DNA of 63,425 nucleotides, filler included, from Octopus bimaculoides (lineage: Eukaryota): assembly GCF_001194135.2 (NCBI RefSeq). It is 4 parts of 4 records of this genome, joined end to end, with 100 filler letters (N's around TTAATTAATTAA, not from the genome) between each part and the next. Parts side by side here need not be neighbours in the genome. Positions count along the whole stretch, not along the records: positions 1 to 18,945 come from NC_068985.1; 3 more parts are not named here. One strand, given 5' to 3'. Shown here one piece after another: positions 2,818 to 18,868 of the stretch. The notes beneath the pieces were generated by a model. The model did not search any database, was not told where the DNA came from, and saw only the letters and a program-made list of their open reading frames with translations. Every line of letters starts with the position of its first letter. Positions within the stretch are counted from its first letter, which is position 1. A program made the position numbers and the translations under genes.

Positions 2818-2850
<33 letters not shown>

Positions 2851-3223
2851 NNNNNNNNNNNNNNNNNNNNNNNNNNNNNNNNNNNNNNNNNNNNNNNNNN
2901 NNNNNNNNNNNNNNNNNNNNNNNNNNNNNNNNNNNNNNNNNNNNNNNNNNNNNNNNNNNNNNNNNNNNNNNNNNNNNNNNNNNNNNNNNNNNNNNNNNNN
3001 NNNNNNNNNNNNNNNNNNNNNNNNNNNNNNNNNNNNNNNNNNNNNNNNNNNNNNNNNNNNNNNNNNNNNNNNNNNNNNNNNNNNNNNNNNNNNNNNNNNN
3101 NNNNNNNNNNNNNNNNNNNNNNNNNNNNNNTTATACCTTAATTATTTTTTTTACAAAAAAAAAGAAGCATGTTTTAATTTTAAAAATGGTGCGAGAATAC
3201 TTTAATAATATTTACAGATCCTA

Positions 3224-3592
3224 AGGCGGCGAGTTGGCAGAAACGCTGGGCGAAATACTTAGTGGTATTTCGACTGCCGCTACGTTCTGAGTTCAAATTC
3301 CGCCACACTCGACTTTGCCTTTCATCCTTTCGGGGTCGATAAATTAAATACCAGTTACGCACTGGGGTCAATTTAATCGACTTAATCCCTTTGTCTGTCC
3401 TTGTTTGTCCCCTCTGTGTGTAGCCCCTTGTGGGCAGTAAAGATATAAGAAACGTTAGCACGCCGGGCGAAATGCTAAGTGGTATTTCGTCTTTACGTTC
3501 TGATTTCAAATTCTGCCGAGATCGACTTTTTCTTTCAGCCTTTCGGAGTCGATCAATTAAATTACGGGCCTTGTGCCTAGAGTAGAAAAGAA
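3224..3592 (+). mobile_element. tRNA-derived SINE, family 1 (GGCGGCGAGCTGGCAGAA head), dimeric copy
   Basis: Head ggcggcgagttggcagaa, B-box-like gagttcaaattccgcc, body tttcatcctttcggggtcgataaattaa; a second head/body repeat starts ~3450. The same sequence recurs many times in the window. Confidence 0.85.
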
Positions 3593-3689
3593 AATTTGCA
3601 GATCCTACTATCATTTTCTGGAACACATCTATATCTAGCCTTATAAGTAACCTATTGATGTCTTTACATAAGTGGTGGTCCGTCATTCT

Positions 3690-4480
3690 AGCTGTATCAT
3701 TTGCATATGAGGTGATAAATACTTTTCGTAACTGTTCAGAACCGCTAAAGCGACTTTTAAAATGCTTAGTTGCATTTGTTTTTGGCTTTTTACATTACAT
3801 TTTATGTTCATATACCGCAGAGATCAACTCCGCCTTTCCTTGATAAAATTTATCCGTAGAGCCTTTTCCTCTGTTACTAAAGTCATTCATTTTGTTTCTT
3901 CCTTTATACTTTTTCCTTCAGTCATAGCCATCTGTCCTTGTCATTCCTTATGTCTTTTGTCTTTTCTGAAAAGCCCAAAGTGAAGCTTCTTTCCTTTAAT
4001 AGCTTGATTTTTTTCTTCGCCATATTTTACTTTTTGAGTTCTCTTTTGAGTTCTGCACATTCTGTACATAGTCCTTCACTTATTAATCCCTTAAGAAGTA
4101 TTTCTTCATGATCTTTTTGATAATAATATAAACTTGTCTTCTCTAGATCTACTACTTCCATCAACATTCATTAAGCGTATTTATCCTACTCTTTCCCAGC
4201 ATGACTGGTCCACATCAGATGGGAGATTCATACGTCAGCACACTTTGAGCTACTGCTTCGTTTTTCTAACGGTATCCTTTAGCTCATCTTTTTTCCATTC
4301 AATAATTCCTCCTCCATACCTTATGACACATACTTCTCTCAGGCTGAGTGTTTGTATGATGTCTTCTGTATCCAATATGGTTTTTATTCTATGAAAATAT
4401 CTTTCTGCCTTCATTTCGATATTTTTGATCTTGTTATATTCTAGTATTTCTAGATATTTATGTGTCTTCTGCTTTCAATG
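3690..4480 (-). pseudogene. Decayed R4/Dong-like non-LTR retrotransposon fragment (RT C-terminal region)
   Basis: Minus strand 4274-4327 reads VIRYGGGIIEWKKDELKD, the post-RT motif typical of R4/Dong-group elements; flanking frames are broken by stops and frameshifts. Confidence 0.65.
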
Positions 4481-4849: not shown

Positions 4850-5520
4850 ATGTTTCTTAATATAGTCTTCTTACATTTCAAGAATCTTCCTTGGGATTCC
4901 TGTAGACACAGGAGGGTAATTTTCTGCAGGCTGATTATGCAAATTTCTGTTCCAATTCACCTTTAGTCTTTCATATCGTATTTTGAGTCTTGTGCCAAGT
5001 TCCCCAAATACTAAAGGAATAATTGTTGCTTTTGTAATCCACACTTTCCTCAGCTCTCTGGCGAGAGCCCGATATTTCTCATTTTTTCAATTTCTTTGTT
5101 TTCGACTCTGTTATCATAGGGAATTGTAAGATCTATGATCATACACTGATTGTTTATTTTGTCCTCTGTGATCATATCTGGTCTTCTTGATTCAGTAGTT
5201 TGGTCAGTCTTTATGAGGTATCCCACAAGATCTTCCAATTATCTTTTTCCAGCATAGCCTCTGGTTCATGCTCATACCACTTTTCTGTTGTTTTGAAGCC
5301 ACACACTCGATAAACAACCCAATGCATTCTTTTGCCGACACGATCATGTTTGCAGTTATACTCTTTTTATGCTAGTATACTACACTCACTTTAAAAGGGG
5401 ACTGATATTTCGTCTCCTTTCTTGCAGGTTCTATATCTCCTGTCTGACTGAGTTTTGTCGATCTTTGTATTTATCAAAATTGTTCTAAGGACTTGTTCCT
5501 GAACGGCTGCGTATCTTTCC
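4850..5520 (-). pseudogene. R4/Dong-like LINE 3' fragment: CCHC knuckle region plus restriction-like endonuclease (RLE)
   Basis: Minus strand reads AAVQEQVLRT...HDRVGKRMHW...WYEHEP; ORF 5050-5238 contains RRPDMI...CMIIDLTIPYDNRVENKEIEK (PD-D-K RLE motif). Confidence 0.85.
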
Positions 5521-7190: not shown

Positions 7191-7293
7191 ATTTATACTT
7201 TATTTGATTTTTAGATTAATATTTTTATGATGAATATTTCTTTGTATGGTATTCGCTGTTATTTTAAAATTATTTGCTCTTATATATTATATG

Positions 7294-7356
<63 letters not shown>

Positions 7357-7362
<6 letters not shown>

Positions 7363-7590
7363 TGCCAGCATCATGATCGTAAGATTGTGGTTTCGATTCC
7401 TGGACCAGGCGACGCGTTGTGTTTTTGAGCAAAACACTTCATTTCACGTTGTTCCAGTCCACTCAGCTGGCGAAAATGAGTAACGCTGCGATGGACTGGC
7501 GTCCCGTCCAGCTGGGGAACACAGCCACCATTGAAACCGGGCCCATGTGCCTGGCTAGGCTTTAAAAGGGCGCATTTATTATTTTTTTTT
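7357..7590 (+). mobile_element. tRNA-derived SINE, family 3 (CORE-like middle), 5'-truncated
   Basis: B-box gtttcgattcc, then gttgtgtttttgagcaaaacacttcatttcac..ccagtccactcagctgg; the head matches minus-strand copies at 10970-11055 and 50845-50915. Confidence 0.75.
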
Positions 7591-7596
7591 ATTTAG

Positions 7597-8630
7597 TTGC
7601 ATACATATAATGTCGGGTTCAAATCCTGTTGATCTCGTCGTCTCTGCTGTACCTCACAGCGGTGTGTTTGTCTGTGAAGTATTAGGGTTTTGCTTTCACT
7701 ATTTTGTTGCATACATATCAATGCCAGGTTCAAATCCCGCTGTTCTCGACGTTTCTGTTCTACATCACGGCGGTACATATATCTGTTAATTATTTGGGAT
7801 TTGTTTGCAGTATTTTCTTGCATGAATATAAATGTCGGGTTCAAAACCCACTCATCCCAGTGTCTCTGTTCAAGCTCCCGGGGTGGGGGTTAATGTAAGA
7901 AGTATTTGGGGTTTGCTTGCAGTATTTTGTAGGGTATGTTTAAACACTGAGTTCCAATCCCGCTGGTCTCAGTGATGTCTTTTACCTCACAGGGGTGTGT
8001 TTGTGTGAGAAGTATTTGTTGCATACATATAAATGTCGGGTTCAAATCCTGCTGGTCTCGACGTCTCCGTTGTACACCCCGGGGTGTGTTTGTCTGCGAA
8101 GAATTGGAGGTTTACTTGCAGTATTTTGTTGCATACATATAAATGCCAGGTTCAAATCCCGCTAGCCCCAGAAACATGTTTCTACCTCACGGGGGTGTGT
8201 TTGTATGAGAAGCATTGGGGGGTTTGCCTGCAGTATTTTTGTTGCATACGTTTAAATGCCAAGTTCAAATCCCGCTGGTTTCGACGTCTCTCTTCTATCT
8301 CCCGGGGATGTGTCTGTCTGTAAAGTACTGGGGATTTGCTTGCAATATTTTGTTGAATACATATAAATGTAGAGTTCAAATCCCACTTATCCCAGTGTCT
8401 CTGTTCTAGTTCCAGTGGGTGTGTTTGTTCTTGAAGAAGGTGGGGGGGATTGCTTTCAGTGTTTTGTTGCATATGCTTAAATGCCAGGTTCAAATCCTGC
8501 TAGTCCTAGTGACTGTGTTCAACTTCTCGGGCGTGTGTTCGTCTGTGAATATGTGTGTCTCTGCTTGTAATATTTCGTTGAATACGTTTAAATGTTGTAT
8601 TCAAGCGCCGCTGGTCTCTACTTTGCTCAT
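7597..8630 (+). repeat. Tandem array of 10 x ~111-bp units, most with a B-box (GTTCAAATCC)
   Basis: B-box-like motif starts at 7617, 7728, 7839, 7951, 8040, 8150, 8263, 8374, 8488 and ~8599 (spacing 110-114 bp, one 89-bp unit). Confidence 0.95.
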
Positions 8631-8924
8631 CAATCTTCTGGCGATGGTTGTATGTGTGTGTTGTATACCGGTTTATAGATTGTGCCCCTCTTGAAATGTG
8701 AGCCATTGTGCTTAACTTAAAATCAATAATTATCAAGAAAGGAATGGATCGAAATGGGCGCCAAAACACAGGGCTAAACACACCAAAACGTTCTCACCTT
8801 GTCATATGAAAAGGATGTGCAATGAGAGTACCATACAAGCGATCTGGCGAATACTGAGGAAAGTATTAGAAAAAACGTCCTGTGTTTCTAATGACACAGA
8901 CTTAATAAGATTTATTGCAGTGAT

Positions 8925-9195
8925 CTATATCATTACGTCAACAGTATTCGAAAATAATTGTTCGTAAACAATTATTCGAAAAACATTTATTCGAATGGAA
9001 AATTGTATGAATGAAAATTATTTAAAAGGAATATTATACGAAATGTTAATTATTCTTAATTTTTTTATTTTACTTAAAGAAAAACGATAAAATGAAAAAC
9101 CAAGTACGCAAGTGATATTTATTTCGAATAACTGCTTTTCGAATAATTGTATTCGAACAATTGTTTTCGAACAATTTTCATGATACGCAGATACT
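8925..9195. mobile_element. MITE-like element with ~60-bp imperfect inverted arms built of ~15-bp TTCGAA subrepeats
   Basis: Left arm cagtattcgaaaataattgttcgtaaacaattattcgaaaaacatttattcgaa (8942-8995) matches the reverse complement of right arm tttcgaataactgcttttcgaataattgtattcgaacaattgttttcgaacaattttc (9122-9179). Confidence 0.7.
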
Positions 9196-9294
9196 ACAAA
9201 AAAAGTCTATAAAAATCGCCTTGTTGTTTCAAAAATGAAAAAAAAAACCCAGAAAGATATAATTTATTAGAAATTATTATTCATTATATTCTTG

Positions 9295-9460
9295 CAGCTT
9301 TTACGTTCTGAGTTCAAATTCCGCCGAGGTAGACGTTGCCTTTCATCCTTTCAGTATCAATAAAATGACGTACCTGTCAAGTACAGAGACCGGATAAACA
9401 GACATGTCTCCTCTCCTTAAAACTGCTGGCCTTGTGCCAAGATTACAAAAAAATTATTAA
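9295..9460 (+). mobile_element. SINE family 1, truncated
   Basis: acgttctgagttcaaattccgccgaggtagacgttgcctttcatcc...ggccttgtgcc. Confidence 0.75.
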
Positions 9461-12412: not shown

Positions 12413-13075
12413 NNNNNNNNNNNNNNNNNNNNNNNNNNNNNNNNNNNNNNNNNNNNNNNNNNNNNNNNNNNNNNNNNNNNNNNNNNNNNNNNNNNNNNNN
12501 NNNNNNNNNNNNNNNNNNNNNNNNNNNNNNNNNNNNNNNNNNNNNNNNNNNNNNNNNNNNNNNNNNNNNNNNNNNNNNNNNNNNNNNNNNNNNNNNNNNN
12601 NNNNNNNNNNNNNNNNNNNNNNNNNNNNNNNNNNNNNNNNNNNNNNNNNNNNNNNNNNNNNNNNNNNNNNNNNNNNNNNNNNNNNNNNNNNNNNNNNNNN
12701 NNNNNNNNNNNNNNNNNNNNNNNNNNNNNNNNNNNNNNNNNNNNNNNNNNNNNNNNNNNNNNNNNNNNNNNNNNNNNNNNNNNNNNNNNNNNNNNNNNNN
12801 NNNNNNNNNNNNNNNNNNNNNNNNNNNNNNNNNNNNNNNNNNNNNNNNNNNNNNNNNNNNNNNNNNNNNNNNNNNNNNNNNNNNNNNNNNNNNNNNNNNN
12901 NNNNNNNNNNNNNNNNNNNNNNNNNNNNNNNNNNNNNNNNNNNNNNNNNNNNNNNNNNNNNNNNNNNNNNNNNNNNNNNNNNNNNNNNNNNNNNNNNNNN
13001 NNNNNNNNNNNNNNNNNNNNNNNNNNNNNNNNNNNNNNNNNNNNNNNNNNNNNNNNNNNNNNNNNNNNNNNNNNN

Positions 13076-13352
13076 GAATGTGGAATCTAAAAACAGAAAC
13101 AATTCCTATCATAGTAGGTGCCTTAGGTATAATAAAAAAATATTCAGACAAATACATAACAAAAATAGCAGGACTTACAAATATATATAACATACAGAAA
13201 ATTGCACTACTGGGTACTGCACACATCCTACGCAAAACACTTTCAATACAGTAAACATAAGAGCACCACAGCAAACCACAGCACATACCCAAGGCGCACA
13301 GAGCTGCGCTCGGTAGTGAAGTGAAAGCACGTTATAAAAATAAAACTACTGA
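13076..13352 (+). mobile_element. R4/Dong-like LINE 3' end, subfamily A (young), (AAT)n tail
   Basis: Reads MWNLKTETIPIIVGALGIIKKY...IQKIALLGTAHILRKTLSIQ*, then a short 3' UTR and (AAT)n; near-identical to 31699-31980 and to 58625-58925 (minus). Confidence 0.9.
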
Positions 13353-14002: not shown

Positions 14003-14355
14003 ATGATAGAAGCACCACCCTGTAATTCAGGGAGAGAAAATGTAACGAATTTTTTTGACTTTCCAAAACATACAGACTGGATAATCAAAGCTAACAAACC
14101 TGATATTTTTGTGAAAGACCAAAATAATAAAGTTTGTTTATTGATTGACATGAGCATACTTTGTGATCATAATATCTCAGCAAAAGAATTTGATAAGCTC
14201 AGAAAATATAACGATTTGCTGATTGAAATCGAAAAAATGTGGCATCACCAGACGGTGAGAATACCAATAATTCTAGGAGCACTTGGAAGAAGTGCAAAAG
14301 ACTGTTTTAGCTGGTATGTCACGCGTATTGAGAAGAGCATTGTTGCTGTGAATTT
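14003..14355 (+). pseudogene. R4/Dong-like RLE fragment, subfamily D
   Basis: TDWIIKANKPDIFVKDQNNKVCLLIDMSILCDHNISAKEFDKLRKYNDLLIEIEKMW...IPIILGALG; 3' end gaagagcattgttgctgtgaatttt shared with 32000-32240. Confidence 0.85.
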
Positions 14356-16759
14356 TCCTACCCTTTCTCTCTTTTATTTTATTTTTCTATTTTTCATATT
14401 TTNNNNNNNNNNNNNNNNNNNNNNNNNNNNNNNNNNNNNNNNNNNNNNNNNNNNNNNNNNNNNNNNNNNNNNNNNNNNNNNNNNNNNNNNNNNNNNNNNN
14501 NNNNNNNNNNNNNNNNNNNNNNNNNNNNNNNNNNNNNNNNNNNNNNNNNNNNNNNNNNNNNNNNNNNNNNNNNNNNNNNNNNNNNNNNNNNNNNNNNNNN
14601 NNNNNNNNNNNNNNNNNNNNNNNNNNNNNNNNNNNNNNNNNNNNNNNNNNNNNNNNNNNNNNNNNNNNNNNNNNNNNNNNNNNNNNNNNNNNNNNNNNNN
14701 NNNNNNNNNNNNNNNNNNNNNNNNNNNNNNNNNNNNNNNNNNNNNNNNNNNNNNNNNNNNNNNNNNNNNNNNNNNNNNNNNNNNNNNNNNNNNNNNNNNN
14801 NNNNNNNNNNNNNNNNNNNNNNNNNNNNNNNNNNNNNNNNNNNNNNNNNNNNNNNNNNNNNNNNNNNNNNNNNNNNNNNNNNNNNNNNNNNNNNNNNNNN
14901 NNNNNNNNNNNNNNNNNNNNNNNNNNNNNNNNNNNNNNNNNNNNNNNNNNNNNNNNNNNNNNNNNNNNNNNNNNNNNNNNNNNNNNNNNNNNNNNNNNNN
15001 NNNNNNNNNNNNNNNNNNNNNNNNNNNNNNNNNNNNNNNNNNNNNNNNNNNNNNNNNNNNNNNNNNNNNNNNNNNNNNNNNNNNNNNNNNNNNNNNNNNN
15101 NNNATATATATATATATATATATACATATATATTATATACACAAATCGATGCGATATAGGCATATAATATGCACATATTCGAAGGTTGACAATTCATAGA
15201 CTGTGTACATTATGTTCAATTCGATAGACATCGTCAATTGTTTAAAAAGACAGTAATGCGACCACCAAACTAAAAGGCCTCGCTGCTGGAGATGTCGAAA
15301 AACTTTTTGTTATCTCTGATTCTATCACATTTGTTGGCTTCATAGTTTTGTCTGCTTGAATGTTCATTCAGTCTGGTATCTCTGAATGATTGAAAGAAGT
15401 CCAGAATATTTTTTTTTTTTTTCATTTTAACAAATGATTACGAAACAACATTAAAAAAAAAAATGTTCTGTTATGAATGAATTAACTTATAAGACTGTCG
15501 ACTGCTGTAGCATGCAAGTTAAGAAGAAATTGCCATTTCTAAACTCAACTTTGATTCCTTTTCTTAGAAGAGAAGAAGAGACTGTGAGTGGTTCCACGTG
15601 ACCCTTTCACACTCAGCATAGGAGATGCTGAGAGAGTGAAAGAGAGAGGGATTAAGATATTGCTAATCGGCCGCCTTATATCTCAAATTAGTCACTACAA
15701 ATTCTTTCTACTTTATGGTTGTGGTTGTCTTGTTAGATTCCAACATGCTGAAATAACACTAGCTTATCATTTGTTTCCGGTAGCGTGTACATTTAAAATT
15801 GGTTCCTTGTAGCAGTATTATAGTTTCTATTAAATTTCTTCAGAGTTATATTTAATTATGTTTAGTCACATCTTGTCACTTCATAAGTCTTTTCTGACAA
15901 TCTTATTTAATTTTCTTCAATTTGGTGTGAAGTTGCACCAATTTGGAGTAAAATTTATAAATGAGAATGAAGTTGGCATCAGCTTGTTATACTTGGTTGC
16001 AATCAGTTTCTCATCAATCATATAGGCAAACATTGTTGTCACTAAGACCGCTAATGATGCGTGCGGTTGGTTGGTTTACTTGTGAAAAGTGATAATTAAA
16101 ACAACAAAAAGAAAATATCTCATCCGTTAATTTTATTTTTCTATGTTGACAATATTCTATTTTGAATTGTTGAAATCTACCACTGGTATTGCTGTAGGGA
16201 ACATAATTTTGAATATGATAATAATGCTGTAAGCGTCGAAACCATCACACAAGTTCCACATTACAAGGAAAAACAATTCTGTCCTCATTGTACTTCCTAC
16301 TACTGTAGATGTTATTTTGTCATTCTTTTTACTCTTACTCCTATCAATAGAAATTAAATGCATTCTAGTAGTGTTTACACTTTTAGGTGAGAGACTTGAG
16401 ATGCCACTTACAAGCAATATTTCGTTTATATAACGAAGGAAGAAGAGTGATGGCTTAGCAGAATTCGTAAGGTGGGAGGATAAATTAGCATGTGGTATTA
16501 ATCAGAATACTACTACCGTTCAACCTTCCTGGGTCGATAAAACACAAATCAAATACTGGAGTCGATATGATTGACTGTACTCGCTCCAACCAAACAGTGG
16601 TATATCCTTGTAGCAAAATTATTATAACTGAAAAGCGTATATTCTCGGAGTCGAACGTGTCGGCAACTATGACCACTGGGCAATATGCCAACAATTTTAC
16701 GAGCAAACAAAGTGTTATAAATATATACGAAAAACCTTAGATGGCAACTACTTGGCTAC

Positions 16760-18124: not shown

Positions 18125-18868
18125 GCGGAAACGGAGGGTCTAATCTGTGCTGCCCAAGAGCAAGCACTAAGAACAAAGTATATAAAATACAGAATAGACA
18201 ACACATTAGAAGTGATAAGTGCAGAATGTGTGGACAAAACGGTAAAACAGTATGGCATATTACCAGCCAATGTACGCCACTAGCCCAGAAGAAATATAAG
18301 AGACGCCACGACAATATAGCCACGCTTGTCCATTGGACACTTTGCAACAAGTATGGACTTGAGAGAGCAAAAAATTGGTTCGACCTCAAACATGAAAGCA
18401 TCGACAAAAATGGAAATGCAAAGATCCTATGGGATCTAATGATTCAGTGCGACCATGAGATAGAGAATAGGAAGCCAGACATAGTCTTAATTGAGAAAGA
18501 AAACAAACTATGCTGGATCATAGACATAGCATGCCCAGCTGACGACAAGGTATACGATAAGGAAGAAAGAAAAGTCGTTAGATATTACAGGTTAGCTTGG
18601 GAAGTTAAGCAGTTGTGGTCGATGAAAAAGGTAGCAGTAGTACCAATAATTGTCGGAGCCCTGGAAACAGTGAGCAAAAATCTCGAGAAGTACGTCGAAC
18701 AAATAGGGGCTGCAATAAGGGTGGAGCACTTGCCGAAAACAGCACTGCTTGGAACCGCCCGAATACTCCGGAAGGTGCTCGAAAAATACGAGGTGTTATC
18801 TTAGTTCCCTGGTAGTGAACAGCTGACACCGCAGTACATCTCCAGCGTTAGAAGCTGTGCAAAGGCAA
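18125..18868 (+). mobile_element. 5'-truncated R4/Dong-like LINE, subfamily B: CCHC knuckle plus RLE, flanked by (AAT)n on both sides
   Basis: TEGLICAAQEQALRT then (frameshift) ORF 18226-18804 CRMCGQNGKTVWHITSQC...RRHD...WDLMIQCDHEIENRKPDIV...IDIACP...VPIIVGALE...ALLGTARILRKVLE; (AAT)n at 18061-18124 and 18868-18890. Confidence 0.92.

What the first reader, a model, noticed from the sequence alone, without database searches (positions are those of the whole stretch)
7597..8630. Ten-unit ~111-bp array of regularly spaced Pol III B-boxes
Seen: 10 diverged units; 8 match the B-box consensus GWTCRANNC, and most are preceded ~10 bp upstream by TATAAA/TTTAAA. I see no canonical A-box. By eye the B-box block is better conserved than the rest of the unit. 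The unit loosely parallels the SINE family 1 body (gctt..gtattt..gttcaaat.ccgc..tcgac..cggggt..aagta), and the array starts right after a SINE tail. Established: B-boxes bind TFIIIC, and B-box sites without Pol III can act as chromatin boundaries in yeast and mammals. Inference: a SINE-derived satellite that could be a multivalent TFIIIC platform or a source of tandem small RNAs.
Basis: partly seen in the sequence, partly recalled or inferred. Interest (0 to 1): 0.72.

Follow-up and report, generated by a model that had tools for sequence, protein, structure and literature searches.

The report
Decayed SINE-derived tandem repeat in octopus
A 1.1-kb run of ten diverged 111-bp copies of part of an octopus SINE, each still carrying the SINE's Pol III "B-box", is most likely an ordinary old SINE-derived tandem repeat, not a demonstrated regulatory platform.

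Summary
Window 7592-8684 is a head-to-tail array of ten ~111-bp units. Eight carry GWTCRANNC in phase, seven carry TATAAA/TTTAAA 12 bp upstream of it, and none has an A-box.

A profile built only from 36 dispersed copies of the abundant "family 1" SINE aligns to about 78 of the 111 nt of the unit (SINE positions 26-100; E=3e-5 for the best unit). I showed this SINE to be an Octopus element. The kind is already described: snake sSat3 units are exactly "box B plus part of the body" (PMC10702118).

The functional reading gains nothing.
- The B-box block is better conserved than the rest (0.93 v 0.77, p~3e-4), but a second block, TTTGTTGCATA, is equally conserved.
- The same T-loop block is also the best-conserved block among dispersed SINE copies.
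- The T-stem pairing is not kept, and unit RNAs fold no better than shuffles.
- A T4-5 run sits 26 bp upstream of most B-boxes.
- Units are old, with 68% mean pairwise identity.

Verdict: a new member of a known kind, of low-to-moderate interest.

The parts
7592..8684 (+). Tandem array of ten ~111-bp units. Unit ranges: u1 7592-7702, u2 7703-7813, u3 7814-7925, u4 7926-8014 (89 bp), u5 8015-8124, u6 8125-8237, u7 8238-8348, u8 8349-8462, u9 8463-8573, u10 8574-8684.
   Evidence: TRF, MAFFT alignments, unit HMM E 5e-31 to 7e-18. Mean pairwise identity is 68%, maximum 83%.
7617..8496 (+). Eight phased B-box matches (GTTCAAATC, or GTTCAAAAC in u3) at 7617, 7728, 7839, 8040, 8150, 8263, 8374 and 8488. 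Degenerate copies lie at 7951 (GTTCCAATC) and 8599 (ATTCAAGCG). Start-to-start spacing is 111, 111, 112, 89, 110, 113, 111, 114, 111.
7827..8592 (+). TATAAA/TTTAAA hexamers starting 12 bp upstream of the B-box in u3-u8 and u10 (starts 7827, 7939, 8028, 8138, 8251, 8362, 8587). Relative to SINE1 they fall in a unit-specific 6-nt insertion (TAAATG).
7702..8465 (+). T4-T5 runs at unit junctions (7702, 7813, 7925, 8124, 8236, 8348, 8462), 26 bp upstream of each B-box, on the + strand only. Together with the following GTTGCATA they form the second conserved block, TTTTGTTGCATA.
8230..8307 (+). Best-scoring stretch of SINE1 homology (end of u6 plus u7). It aligns to SINE1 profile positions 27-100 at E=3e-5. 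The same register is found in u2, u5, u10, u4, u1, u8, u6 and u9.
7360..7591 (+). 5'-truncated copy of a second dispersed SINE family with a T-rich end, directly abutting unit 1. It is preceded by (TA)39 at 7281-7358.
   Evidence: Positions 7371-7541 are 80% identical to O. bimaculoides L009 40952-41122.

Best explanation
This is an old, locally amplified, SINE-derived tandem repeat, a short satellite or minisatellite locus.

Origin (inferred). A ~111-bp segment was duplicated head to tail at the DNA level by unequal crossing-over or replication slippage. It was not copied by retrotransposition.

Composition of the unit. About 78 nt come from an Octopus tRNA-derived SINE related to the abundant "family 1". 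This covers the 3' part of the tRNA-like head, including the B-box / T-loop, and the first ~35 nt of the body (SINE positions ~26-100). The remaining ~33 nt have no assignable origin.

Growth and decay. The array probably grew partly by two- and three-unit steps. The units have since decayed to about 70% identity.

The regularly spaced B-boxes are inherited from the SINE promoter. Their good preservation parallels what is seen in dispersed copies of the SINE, so it needs no array-specific function. The units are not complete Pol III genes.

Shown: the array, its phase, the motif counts, the SINE homology, the lack of an A-box, and the lack of RNA-structure conservation. Inferred: the DNA-level amplification mechanism and neutrality.
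For: - Array and unit boundaries.
- A SINE1 profile made of 9 and then 36 dispersed copies, never including array sequence, hits the units in one register. Best values are u7 at E=2.4e-4 then 3e-5, u2 at 4e-3, u5 at 0.02-0.03, u10 and u4 at ~0.05, and the rotated unit consensus at 5e-4 over profile 26-100.
- SINE1 is an Octopus SINE. A spurious ORF through two copies matches O. bimaculoides LOC106868243. There are 21 copies in 62 kb of O. bimaculoides DNA.
- The units are old: mean identity 68%, K2P among u1-u9 0.37.
- Slippage is visible. u4 lacks exactly the 22 nt between two AGTATTT(T)G repeats.
- TRF also reports 224- and 311-bp periods.
- The units sort into variant types: CTCGACGTCTC in u1, u2, u5 and u7; CCCAGTGTCTC in u3 and u8.
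- There is no tRNA or Rfam hit, no A-box, and the T-stem is paired in 60% of cells against 58% in shuffles. Fold z-scores run from -1.1 to +0.8.
- Among 36 dispersed SINE1 copies the same T-loop block is also the best conserved: 0.903 v 0.768, rank 4 of 181, p=7e-4, or 3e-3 when class-matched.
- Precedent: the squamate sSat3 unit is the 3' head including box B plus part of the body (PMC10702118).
Against: - Under uniform decay at the observed 0.207 differences per site, only ~23% of units should keep the motif. The chance of >=8 of 10 is 2.5e-4. Something slows change at the B-box, and equally at TTTGTTGCATA.
- AT/GC/CpG class does not explain this.
- The dispersed-copy control is not a clean neutral control, because source-gene selection also keeps promoters uniform.
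- The array B-box (GGTTCAAATCC) is more canonical than that of SINE1 (GAGTTCAAATTCC; only 3 of 30 copies match GWTCRANNC). The founder was therefore a variant or a sister family that I could not find.
- 33 nt of the unit are unassigned.
- No SINE terminus flanks the array, unlike most squamate sSats.
Confidence: 0.7

Rival explanations
1. The array is the internal tandem-repeat region of a larger non-autonomous mobile element, such as the MITE- or Helitron-like carriers of satellites described in bivalves. On this view it spreads with that element and is not a one-off local amplification.
For: TE-borne tandem repeats are common in molluscs (discussion in PMC11121367). The array sits in TE-dense DNA between a SINE fragment and a 56-nt inverted-repeat structure at 8940-9178.
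Against: No second copy of the unit or of the right flank 8685-9290 was found in the 19-kb window or in 62 kb of O. bimaculoides DNA. That sample is far too small to exclude the idea. No terminal hallmarks were identified.
Confidence: 0.12
2. The array is a multivalent TFIIIC-binding site without Pol III (ETC/COC-like) that acts as a chromatin boundary or looping anchor. It would be kept by selection on the B-boxes.
For: - Eight canonical GGTTCAAATCC-type B-boxes lie at ~111-bp spacing.
- B-box columns are conserved beyond composition-matched expectation, and 8 of 10 are intact against ~2.3 expected.
- Conservation is of the sequence, not of RNA pairing, as expected for a DNA-binding site.
- There is no A-box, as at ETC sites.
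- From my own knowledge, S. pombe IR boundary elements contain B-box clusters that bind TFIIIC.
Against: - An unrelated block, TTTGTTGCATA, is just as conserved.
- Dispersed SINE copies show the same B-box excess.
- Units have drifted to 68% identity, two B-boxes are lost, and CpG sites have decayed.
- Cephalopod domain boundaries are reported to be enriched in CTCF motifs (PMC13652810).
- There are no occupancy, accessibility or orthology data.
Confidence: 0.08
3. The array is a set of Pol III-transcribed small-RNA genes, like the tRNA-related tandem families of amphibians (newt PolIII/TAN, Xenopus OAX, Rana/polIII).
For: Each unit has a B-box. A TATA-like hexamer lies 12 bp upstream in 7 of 10 units. 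One T4-5 run per unit could end unit-length transcripts.
Against: - There is no A-box.
- The T-run lies between the A-box position and the B-box, so a tRNA-type start would terminate after ~30 nt (inference).
- There is no Rfam or tRNA match.
- Folding z-scores are -1.1 to +0.8 and the predicted structures differ between units.
- The T-stem is not maintained.
Confidence: 0.05
4. The array is a cluster of decayed tRNA genes or pseudogenes duplicated directly, with no SINE intermediate.
For: The block AAATGYCRGGTTCAAATCCYGCT matches real bacterial or phage tRNA variable-loop plus T-arm sequences exactly.
Against: ARAGORN finds no tRNA and Rfam gives no tRNA hit even at E<=10. Similarity to SINE1 continues ~30 nt past the end of the tRNA-like part into the SINE body (...TTC..CCT..CGGGG).
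Confidence: 0.03

Closest known systems
SINE-derived satellites (sSat) of squamate reptiles, especially snake sSat3 (Vassetzky et al. 2023, PMC10702118)
   Same: The tandem unit is cut out of a tRNA-derived SINE and covers the 3' part of the head, including promoter box B, plus the start of the body. Loci are short and heterogeneous, with di- or trimeric growth patterns. Some variants include stretches of unknown origin.
   Different: The unit is 111 nt rather than 67 nt. The phylum and the SINE family differ. No longer terminal unit runs to a SINE terminus. Only one locus was seen, so family-level abundance is unknown. The units are much more diverged (68% v 83-92%).
PcH-sat of the limpet Patella caerulea, derived from Nin-SINE (PMC11121367)
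   Same: It is a mollusc tandem repeat whose monomer contains a large SINE segment.
   Different: PcH-sat has a 179-bp unit, 92-99.8% identity between monomers, makes up ~10% of the genome and is pericentromeric. It lacks both box A and box B. The present array is tiny, old, and keeps box B.
tRNA-related, Pol III-transcribed tandem families of amphibians (newt PolIII/TAN, Xenopus OAX/satellite I, Rana/polIII), as listed in PMC10702118
   Same: They are tandem units carrying tRNA-like promoter sequence.
   Different: Their units are 200-750 nt with a fuller tRNA-like segment, and in vitro transcription has been shown for some. Here there is no A-box, no tRNA model hit and no transcript evidence.
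TFIIIC-only sites: yeast ETC sites, and the S. pombe COC sites and IR boundary elements with clustered B-boxes
   Same: Several B-boxes without A-boxes lie in a ~1-kb non-genic stretch. This is what the functional reading would work like.
   Different: Those are defined by measured TFIIIC occupancy and boundary assays. Nothing of that kind exists for this locus.

Membership tests
SINE-derived satellite / tandem repeat | Head-to-tail repeats of one unit (at least 4 middle monomers) | tested here: met
   Ten units; TRF and HMM.
SINE-derived satellite / tandem repeat | The unit is homologous to part of a SINE present as dispersed copies in the same genome, beyond the tRNA-like part | tested here: met
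   The profile of 36 dispersed copies aligns at positions 26-100 to ~78 of the 111 nt. E=3e-5 for u7 and 5e-4 for the unit consensus, with all units in one register. Identity is low, and the exact source subfamily was not found.
SINE-derived satellite / tandem repeat | A terminal unit extends to a SINE terminus (common in squamate sSats, but not universal) | tested here: not met
   Neither the leading nor the trailing flank shows SINE1 similarity.
SINE-derived satellite / tandem repeat | Multiple loci in the genome, i.e. a family rather than a single duplication | not testable with these tools
   No cephalopod genome collection was available. There were 0 further units in the window plus 62 kb of O. 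bimaculoides. ORF-based look-ups found nothing.
Pol III type 2 gene (tRNA-like / active SINE) | A-box TRGCNNAGTGG 30-60 bp upstream of the B-box | tested here: not met
   No phased match at <=2 mismatches. The homologous position reads TTGCTTGCAGTA.
Pol III type 2 gene (tRNA-like / active SINE) | B-box GGTTCRANNCC | tested here: met
   Five units have exact GGTTCAAATCC, three more are within one mismatch, and two are degenerate.
Pol III type 2 gene (tRNA-like / active SINE) | No T4+ terminator between the transcription start and the B-box; terminator downstream | tested here: not met
   A T4-5 run lies 26 bp upstream of the B-box at 7 unit junctions.
tRNA gene | Cloverleaf recognised by tRNA models | tested here: not met
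   ARAGORN finds 0 genes. Rfam gives no tRNA hit at E<=10 on the array alone. T-stem pairing equals shuffles.
TFIIIC-only boundary site (ETC/COC-like) | B-box present without A-box and without a Pol III gene | tested here: met
TFIIIC-only boundary site (ETC/COC-like) | Measured TFIIIC occupancy without Pol III, and boundary or looping activity | not testable with these tools
No ChIP, ATAC or Hi-C access.
TFIIIC-only boundary site (ETC/COC-like) | B-box conserved specifically, relative to the rest of the element and to non-functional copies | tested here: inconclusive
   The B-box is conserved (p~3e-4), but so is TTTGTTGCATA (p~6e-4), and so is the same block in dispersed SINE copies.

The most novel reading that the evidence does not exclude
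The array is a domesticated cluster of SINE-born B-boxes that recruits TFIIIC without Pol III and acts as a chromatin boundary or looping anchor in an octopus genome. It would be an animal counterpart of the fission-yeast B-box boundary elements, and the equally conserved TTTTGTTGCATA block would be a second factor's site.
Probability: 0.06. Interest if true: 0.7.

Novelty: new member of a known kind. Interest (0 to 1): 0.27.

Why it matters
The array adds a cephalopod example to the short list of tandem repeats demonstrably born from a SINE. The unit has the same cut as in snakes: box B plus the start of the body. This hints that this part of tRNA-SINEs is prone to tandemisation. My literature searches found no description of octopus satellites or SINE-derived arrays.

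If the B-boxes were shown to be occupied, the locus would be a compact natural test of TFIIIC-based genome organisation in a lineage whose genome is dominated by SINEs. Nothing here yet argues for that over neutral persistence.

Tried and rejected
2. DNA pattern scans. Scans of metagenome, viral and GTDB contigs with the conserved 23-mer returned only single bacterial or phage tRNA T-arms, not arrays.
3. Array ORF as bait. Using the array's 103-aa spurious ORF to find related arrays gave no exact contig and no homologue.
4. TE protein as bait. The TE protein at 18226-18804 returned ENA contigs (L007, L008) that share only the TE at 72-74% nt identity and no octopus SINEs. They were useless as a cephalopod sample.
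5. Octopus DNA. P0121 gave 76 kb of O. bimaculoides (L009), which was useful for the SINE profile but contains no array unit. P0123 is not on record.
6. Simple pairwise alignment of the unit to single SINE copies was not significant, with z of 0.4-2.8. Only profiles resolved the homology.
7. By-eye resemblances were not supported by nhmmer and are dropped. These were between the trailing flank 8642-8800 and the SINE1 3' body, and between unit positions ~93-105 and the SINE1 A-box region.
8. Higher-order repeat. Identity by lag differs only slightly (0.71-0.74), so I describe multi-unit duplication as probable, not as a clean higher-order repeat.
9. Literature string searches for the unit or the SINE sequence found nothing.

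Full report
**What is there**

Window 7592-8684 is a head-to-tail array of ten units. Tandem Repeats Finder reports period 111 over 7590-7856 and 8011-8594, plus 224- and 311-bp multiples. A profile built from the ten units recovers each of them at E from 5e-31 to 7e-18, and no further full unit anywhere in the 18.9-kb piece.

Unit starts are 7592, 7703, 7814, 7926, 8015, 8125, 8238, 8349, 8463 and 8574. Lengths are 111, 111, 112, 89, 110, 113, 111, 114, 111 and 111.

The units are strongly diverged.
- Mean pairwise identity is 68%, or 72% without the degenerate last unit. The best pair, u1-u5, reaches 83%.
- Mean K2P distance among u1-u9 is 0.37.

Because the copies are this different, the array is unlikely to be an assembly collapse artefact. 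That is an inference.

- Eight of ten units match GWTCRANNC, all on the + strand and in phase. Start-to-start spacing is 111, 111, 112, 89, 110, 113, 111, 114, 111.
- The 9-mer alone is weak evidence: 7.0+-2.5 matches are expected per window and 14 were found.
- The fuller T-loop motif GGTTCRANYCC at <=1 mismatch gives 13 matches against 1.7 expected, and no shuffle of 200 reaches 13.
- TATAAA or TTTAAA is exact in 7 of 10 units, starting 12 bp before the B-box.
- There is no phased match to the A-box consensus TRGCNNAGTGG at up to two mismatches.
- The array abuts a 5'-truncated copy of a second dispersed repeat at 7360-7591. Positions 7371-7541 are 80% identical to a copy in O. bimaculoides.

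**Is the B-box better conserved?**

Yes, but not uniquely.
- The nine B-box columns have a mean majority fraction of 0.933 against 0.774 elsewhere. They rank 2 of 111 circular windows. The column-permutation p is 7e-4, or 2.5e-4 when the columns drawn are matched for AT, GC or CpG-capable class.
- Under uniform decay at the observed 0.207 differences per site, about 23% of units should keep the motif. Eight or more of ten then has probability 2.5e-4.
- However, the block TTTGTTGCATA, 24 nt upstream, is just as conserved: 0.918, class-matched p 5.5e-4. It has no Pol III meaning.
- Among 36 dispersed copies of the related SINE, the same T-loop block is again the best conserved stretch: 0.903 v 0.768, rank 4 of 181, p=7e-4, class-matched 3e-3.

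The pattern is therefore a property of the repeat family, not of the array. That control is imperfect, because selection on source genes also keeps promoters uniform among dispersed copies. Even so, it removes the argument that the array's B-boxes are special.

**Origin**

A spurious ORF running through two copies matches annotated proteins of Octopus bimaculoides. A 76-kb O. bimaculoides locus fetched through one of them (L009, 62 kb of it not N) contains 21 more copies. This identifies the family as an Octopus SINE and makes an Octopus origin of the window very likely.

Single-copy pairwise alignments to the unit were not significant. Profiles resolved the relationship.
- A profile of nine dispersed copies, with no array sequence in it, hits u7 at E=2.4e-4 and nearly all other units more weakly, always in the same register.
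- A profile of 36 copies, built with the array masked, aligns positions 27-100 to 8230-8307 at E=3e-5. It aligns positions 26-100 to 78 nt of the rotated unit consensus at E=5e-4.
- The match runs about 30 nt past the tRNA-like part into the SINE body (...TTC..CCT..CGGGG). The link is therefore to a SINE, not merely to a tRNA.

About 33 nt of the unit (GTGTGTTTGTCTGTGAAGTATTGGGGGTTTGCT) remain unassigned. The TATA-like hexamer falls in a 6-nt insertion (TAAATG) relative to the SINE.

The founder was not the mainstream SINE1. The dispersed copies read GAGTTCAAATTCC, and only 3 of 30 match GWTCRANNC. The array reads the canonical GGTTCAAATCC.

Neither flank continues into the rest of a SINE.

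**How it grew**

The evidence points to DNA-level duplication and slippage (inference).
- u4 lacks exactly the 22 nt lying between two AGTATTT(T)G repeats. This is a microhomology deletion.
- The units fall into variant types. CTCGACGTCTC occurs in u1, u2, u5 and u7. CCCAGTGTCTC occurs in u3 and u8. A third type occurs in u4 and u9.
- TRF sees 224- and 311-bp periods, which suggests two- and three-unit steps.
- Identity by lag varies only from 0.71 to 0.74, so this is not a clean higher-order repeat.

**Tests of an RNA or Pol III role**

- ARAGORN finds no tRNA.
- Rfam gives nothing relevant, even at E<=10 on the array alone.
- The T-stem is paired in 60% of cells against 58% in shuffles, with no covariation.
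- Seven units folded as RNA give z-scores from -1.1 to +0.8, and their predicted structures differ.
- A T4-5 run sits 26 bp upstream of the B-box at seven junctions, and only on the + strand. With tRNA-type geometry, a start ~55-65 bp upstream of the B-box would meet this run after ~30 nt. That is an inference from established Pol III biology.
- CpG observed/expected is 0.69 in the array against 0.74 in the rest of the window. The array is not a protected CpG-rich island.

None of this excludes TFIIIC binding to the DNA motif. It argues against the units being small-RNA genes.

**Comparison with known things**

- SINE-derived satellites are described in squamates. [quoted passage not shown] Other variants contain stretches of unknown origin, and di- or trimeric growth is noted (PMC10702118).
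- A mollusc case exists: limpet PcH-sat, derived from Nin-SINE, but without boxes A and B (PMC11121367).
- Older tRNA-like tandem families of amphibians are listed in the same review.
- For cephalopods, a recent 3D-genome paper reports CTCF motifs at domain boundaries and treats SINE-related signal at octopus loop anchors as repeat background (PMC13652810).
- I found no paper on octopus satellites or on this sequence.

The array is therefore a new member of a known kind.

**What could not be done**

- No cephalopod genome collection is searchable here. The public contig scans found only bacterial tRNA T-arms. ORF-based look-ups of the array found nothing.
The first is not met in the strict sense, but is undercut by the two controls above. 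The other two remain open.

**Verdict**

The SINE-derived satellite reading is supported. The TFIIIC-platform and small-RNA readings are unsupported and partly contradicted. My confidence in the neutral SINE-derived tandem repeat is about 0.7. Interest is low to moderate.

Noticed in passing
window 3228-3448(+), 3450-3600(+), 9277-9458(+), 11657-11528(-), 1307-1176(-), 2823-2735(-), 12118-12004(-), 247-174(-), 10123-10082(-), 16514-16582(+), 3760-3849(+): There are at least eleven copies or fragments of one tRNA-derived SINE in 19 kb. Two lie in direct tandem at 3228-3600. The family's T-loop reads GAGTTCAAATTCC, so only 3 of 30 copies match the usual B-box pattern, yet it is the dominant repeat here and in O. 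bimaculoides (21 copies in 62 kb of L009).
   Followed up: partly
window 11050-10975 (-): A tRNA-like head with a perfect A-box (TGGCTCAGTGG, 11044-11034) and GTTTCGATTCC (11000-10990), followed by an A-rich stretch and (GATA)n. It belongs to the same head family as the SINE fragment next to the array. ARAGORN does not call it a tRNA.
   Followed up: partly
window 8940-8995 and 9123-9178: A 56-nt inverted repeat, 86% complementary with 127 nt between the arms, built from tandem 14-mers TATTCGAAAACAAT. It looks like a small foldback or MITE-like element just downstream of the array. No other copy was found in the window or in L009.
   Followed up: partly
window 4871-5238(-), 13078-13254(+), 14003-14400(+), 18226-18804(+): Four fragments of the same retroelement C-terminal domain (...KPDI..IDv..P.D....KY..L..E...W....vIPIvvGALG...). 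Relatives at 45-69% identity are widespread in invertebrate assemblies and sit next to RVT_1 reverse-transcriptase ORFs (L007, L008).
   Followed up: partly
window 1104-1089 (-): A lone GGGTTCAAATCCTGCT, identical to the array's B-box block, inside a diverged SINE head next to another SINE1 copy. It could be a relic of the subfamily that founded the array.
   Followed up: no
window 7926-8014 (unit 4): Unit 4 is 22 nt short. The missing piece lies exactly between two AGTATTT(T)G repeats, which points to a microhomology or slippage deletion.
   Followed up: yes
window about 2851-3130, 12413-13000, 14405-15100: Runs of N (assembly gaps) flanked by (TA)n or (AAT)n microsatellites. The 305-nt "inverted repeats" between 2826-3130 and 14824-15128 reported by the repeat finder are N-run artefacts.
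   Followed up: no
L001, L003 (metagenome contigs): The array's 23-nt conserved block is identical to the variable loop plus T-arm of real bacterial or phage tRNA genes. This shows how tRNA-like that part of the unit still is.
   Followed up: partly
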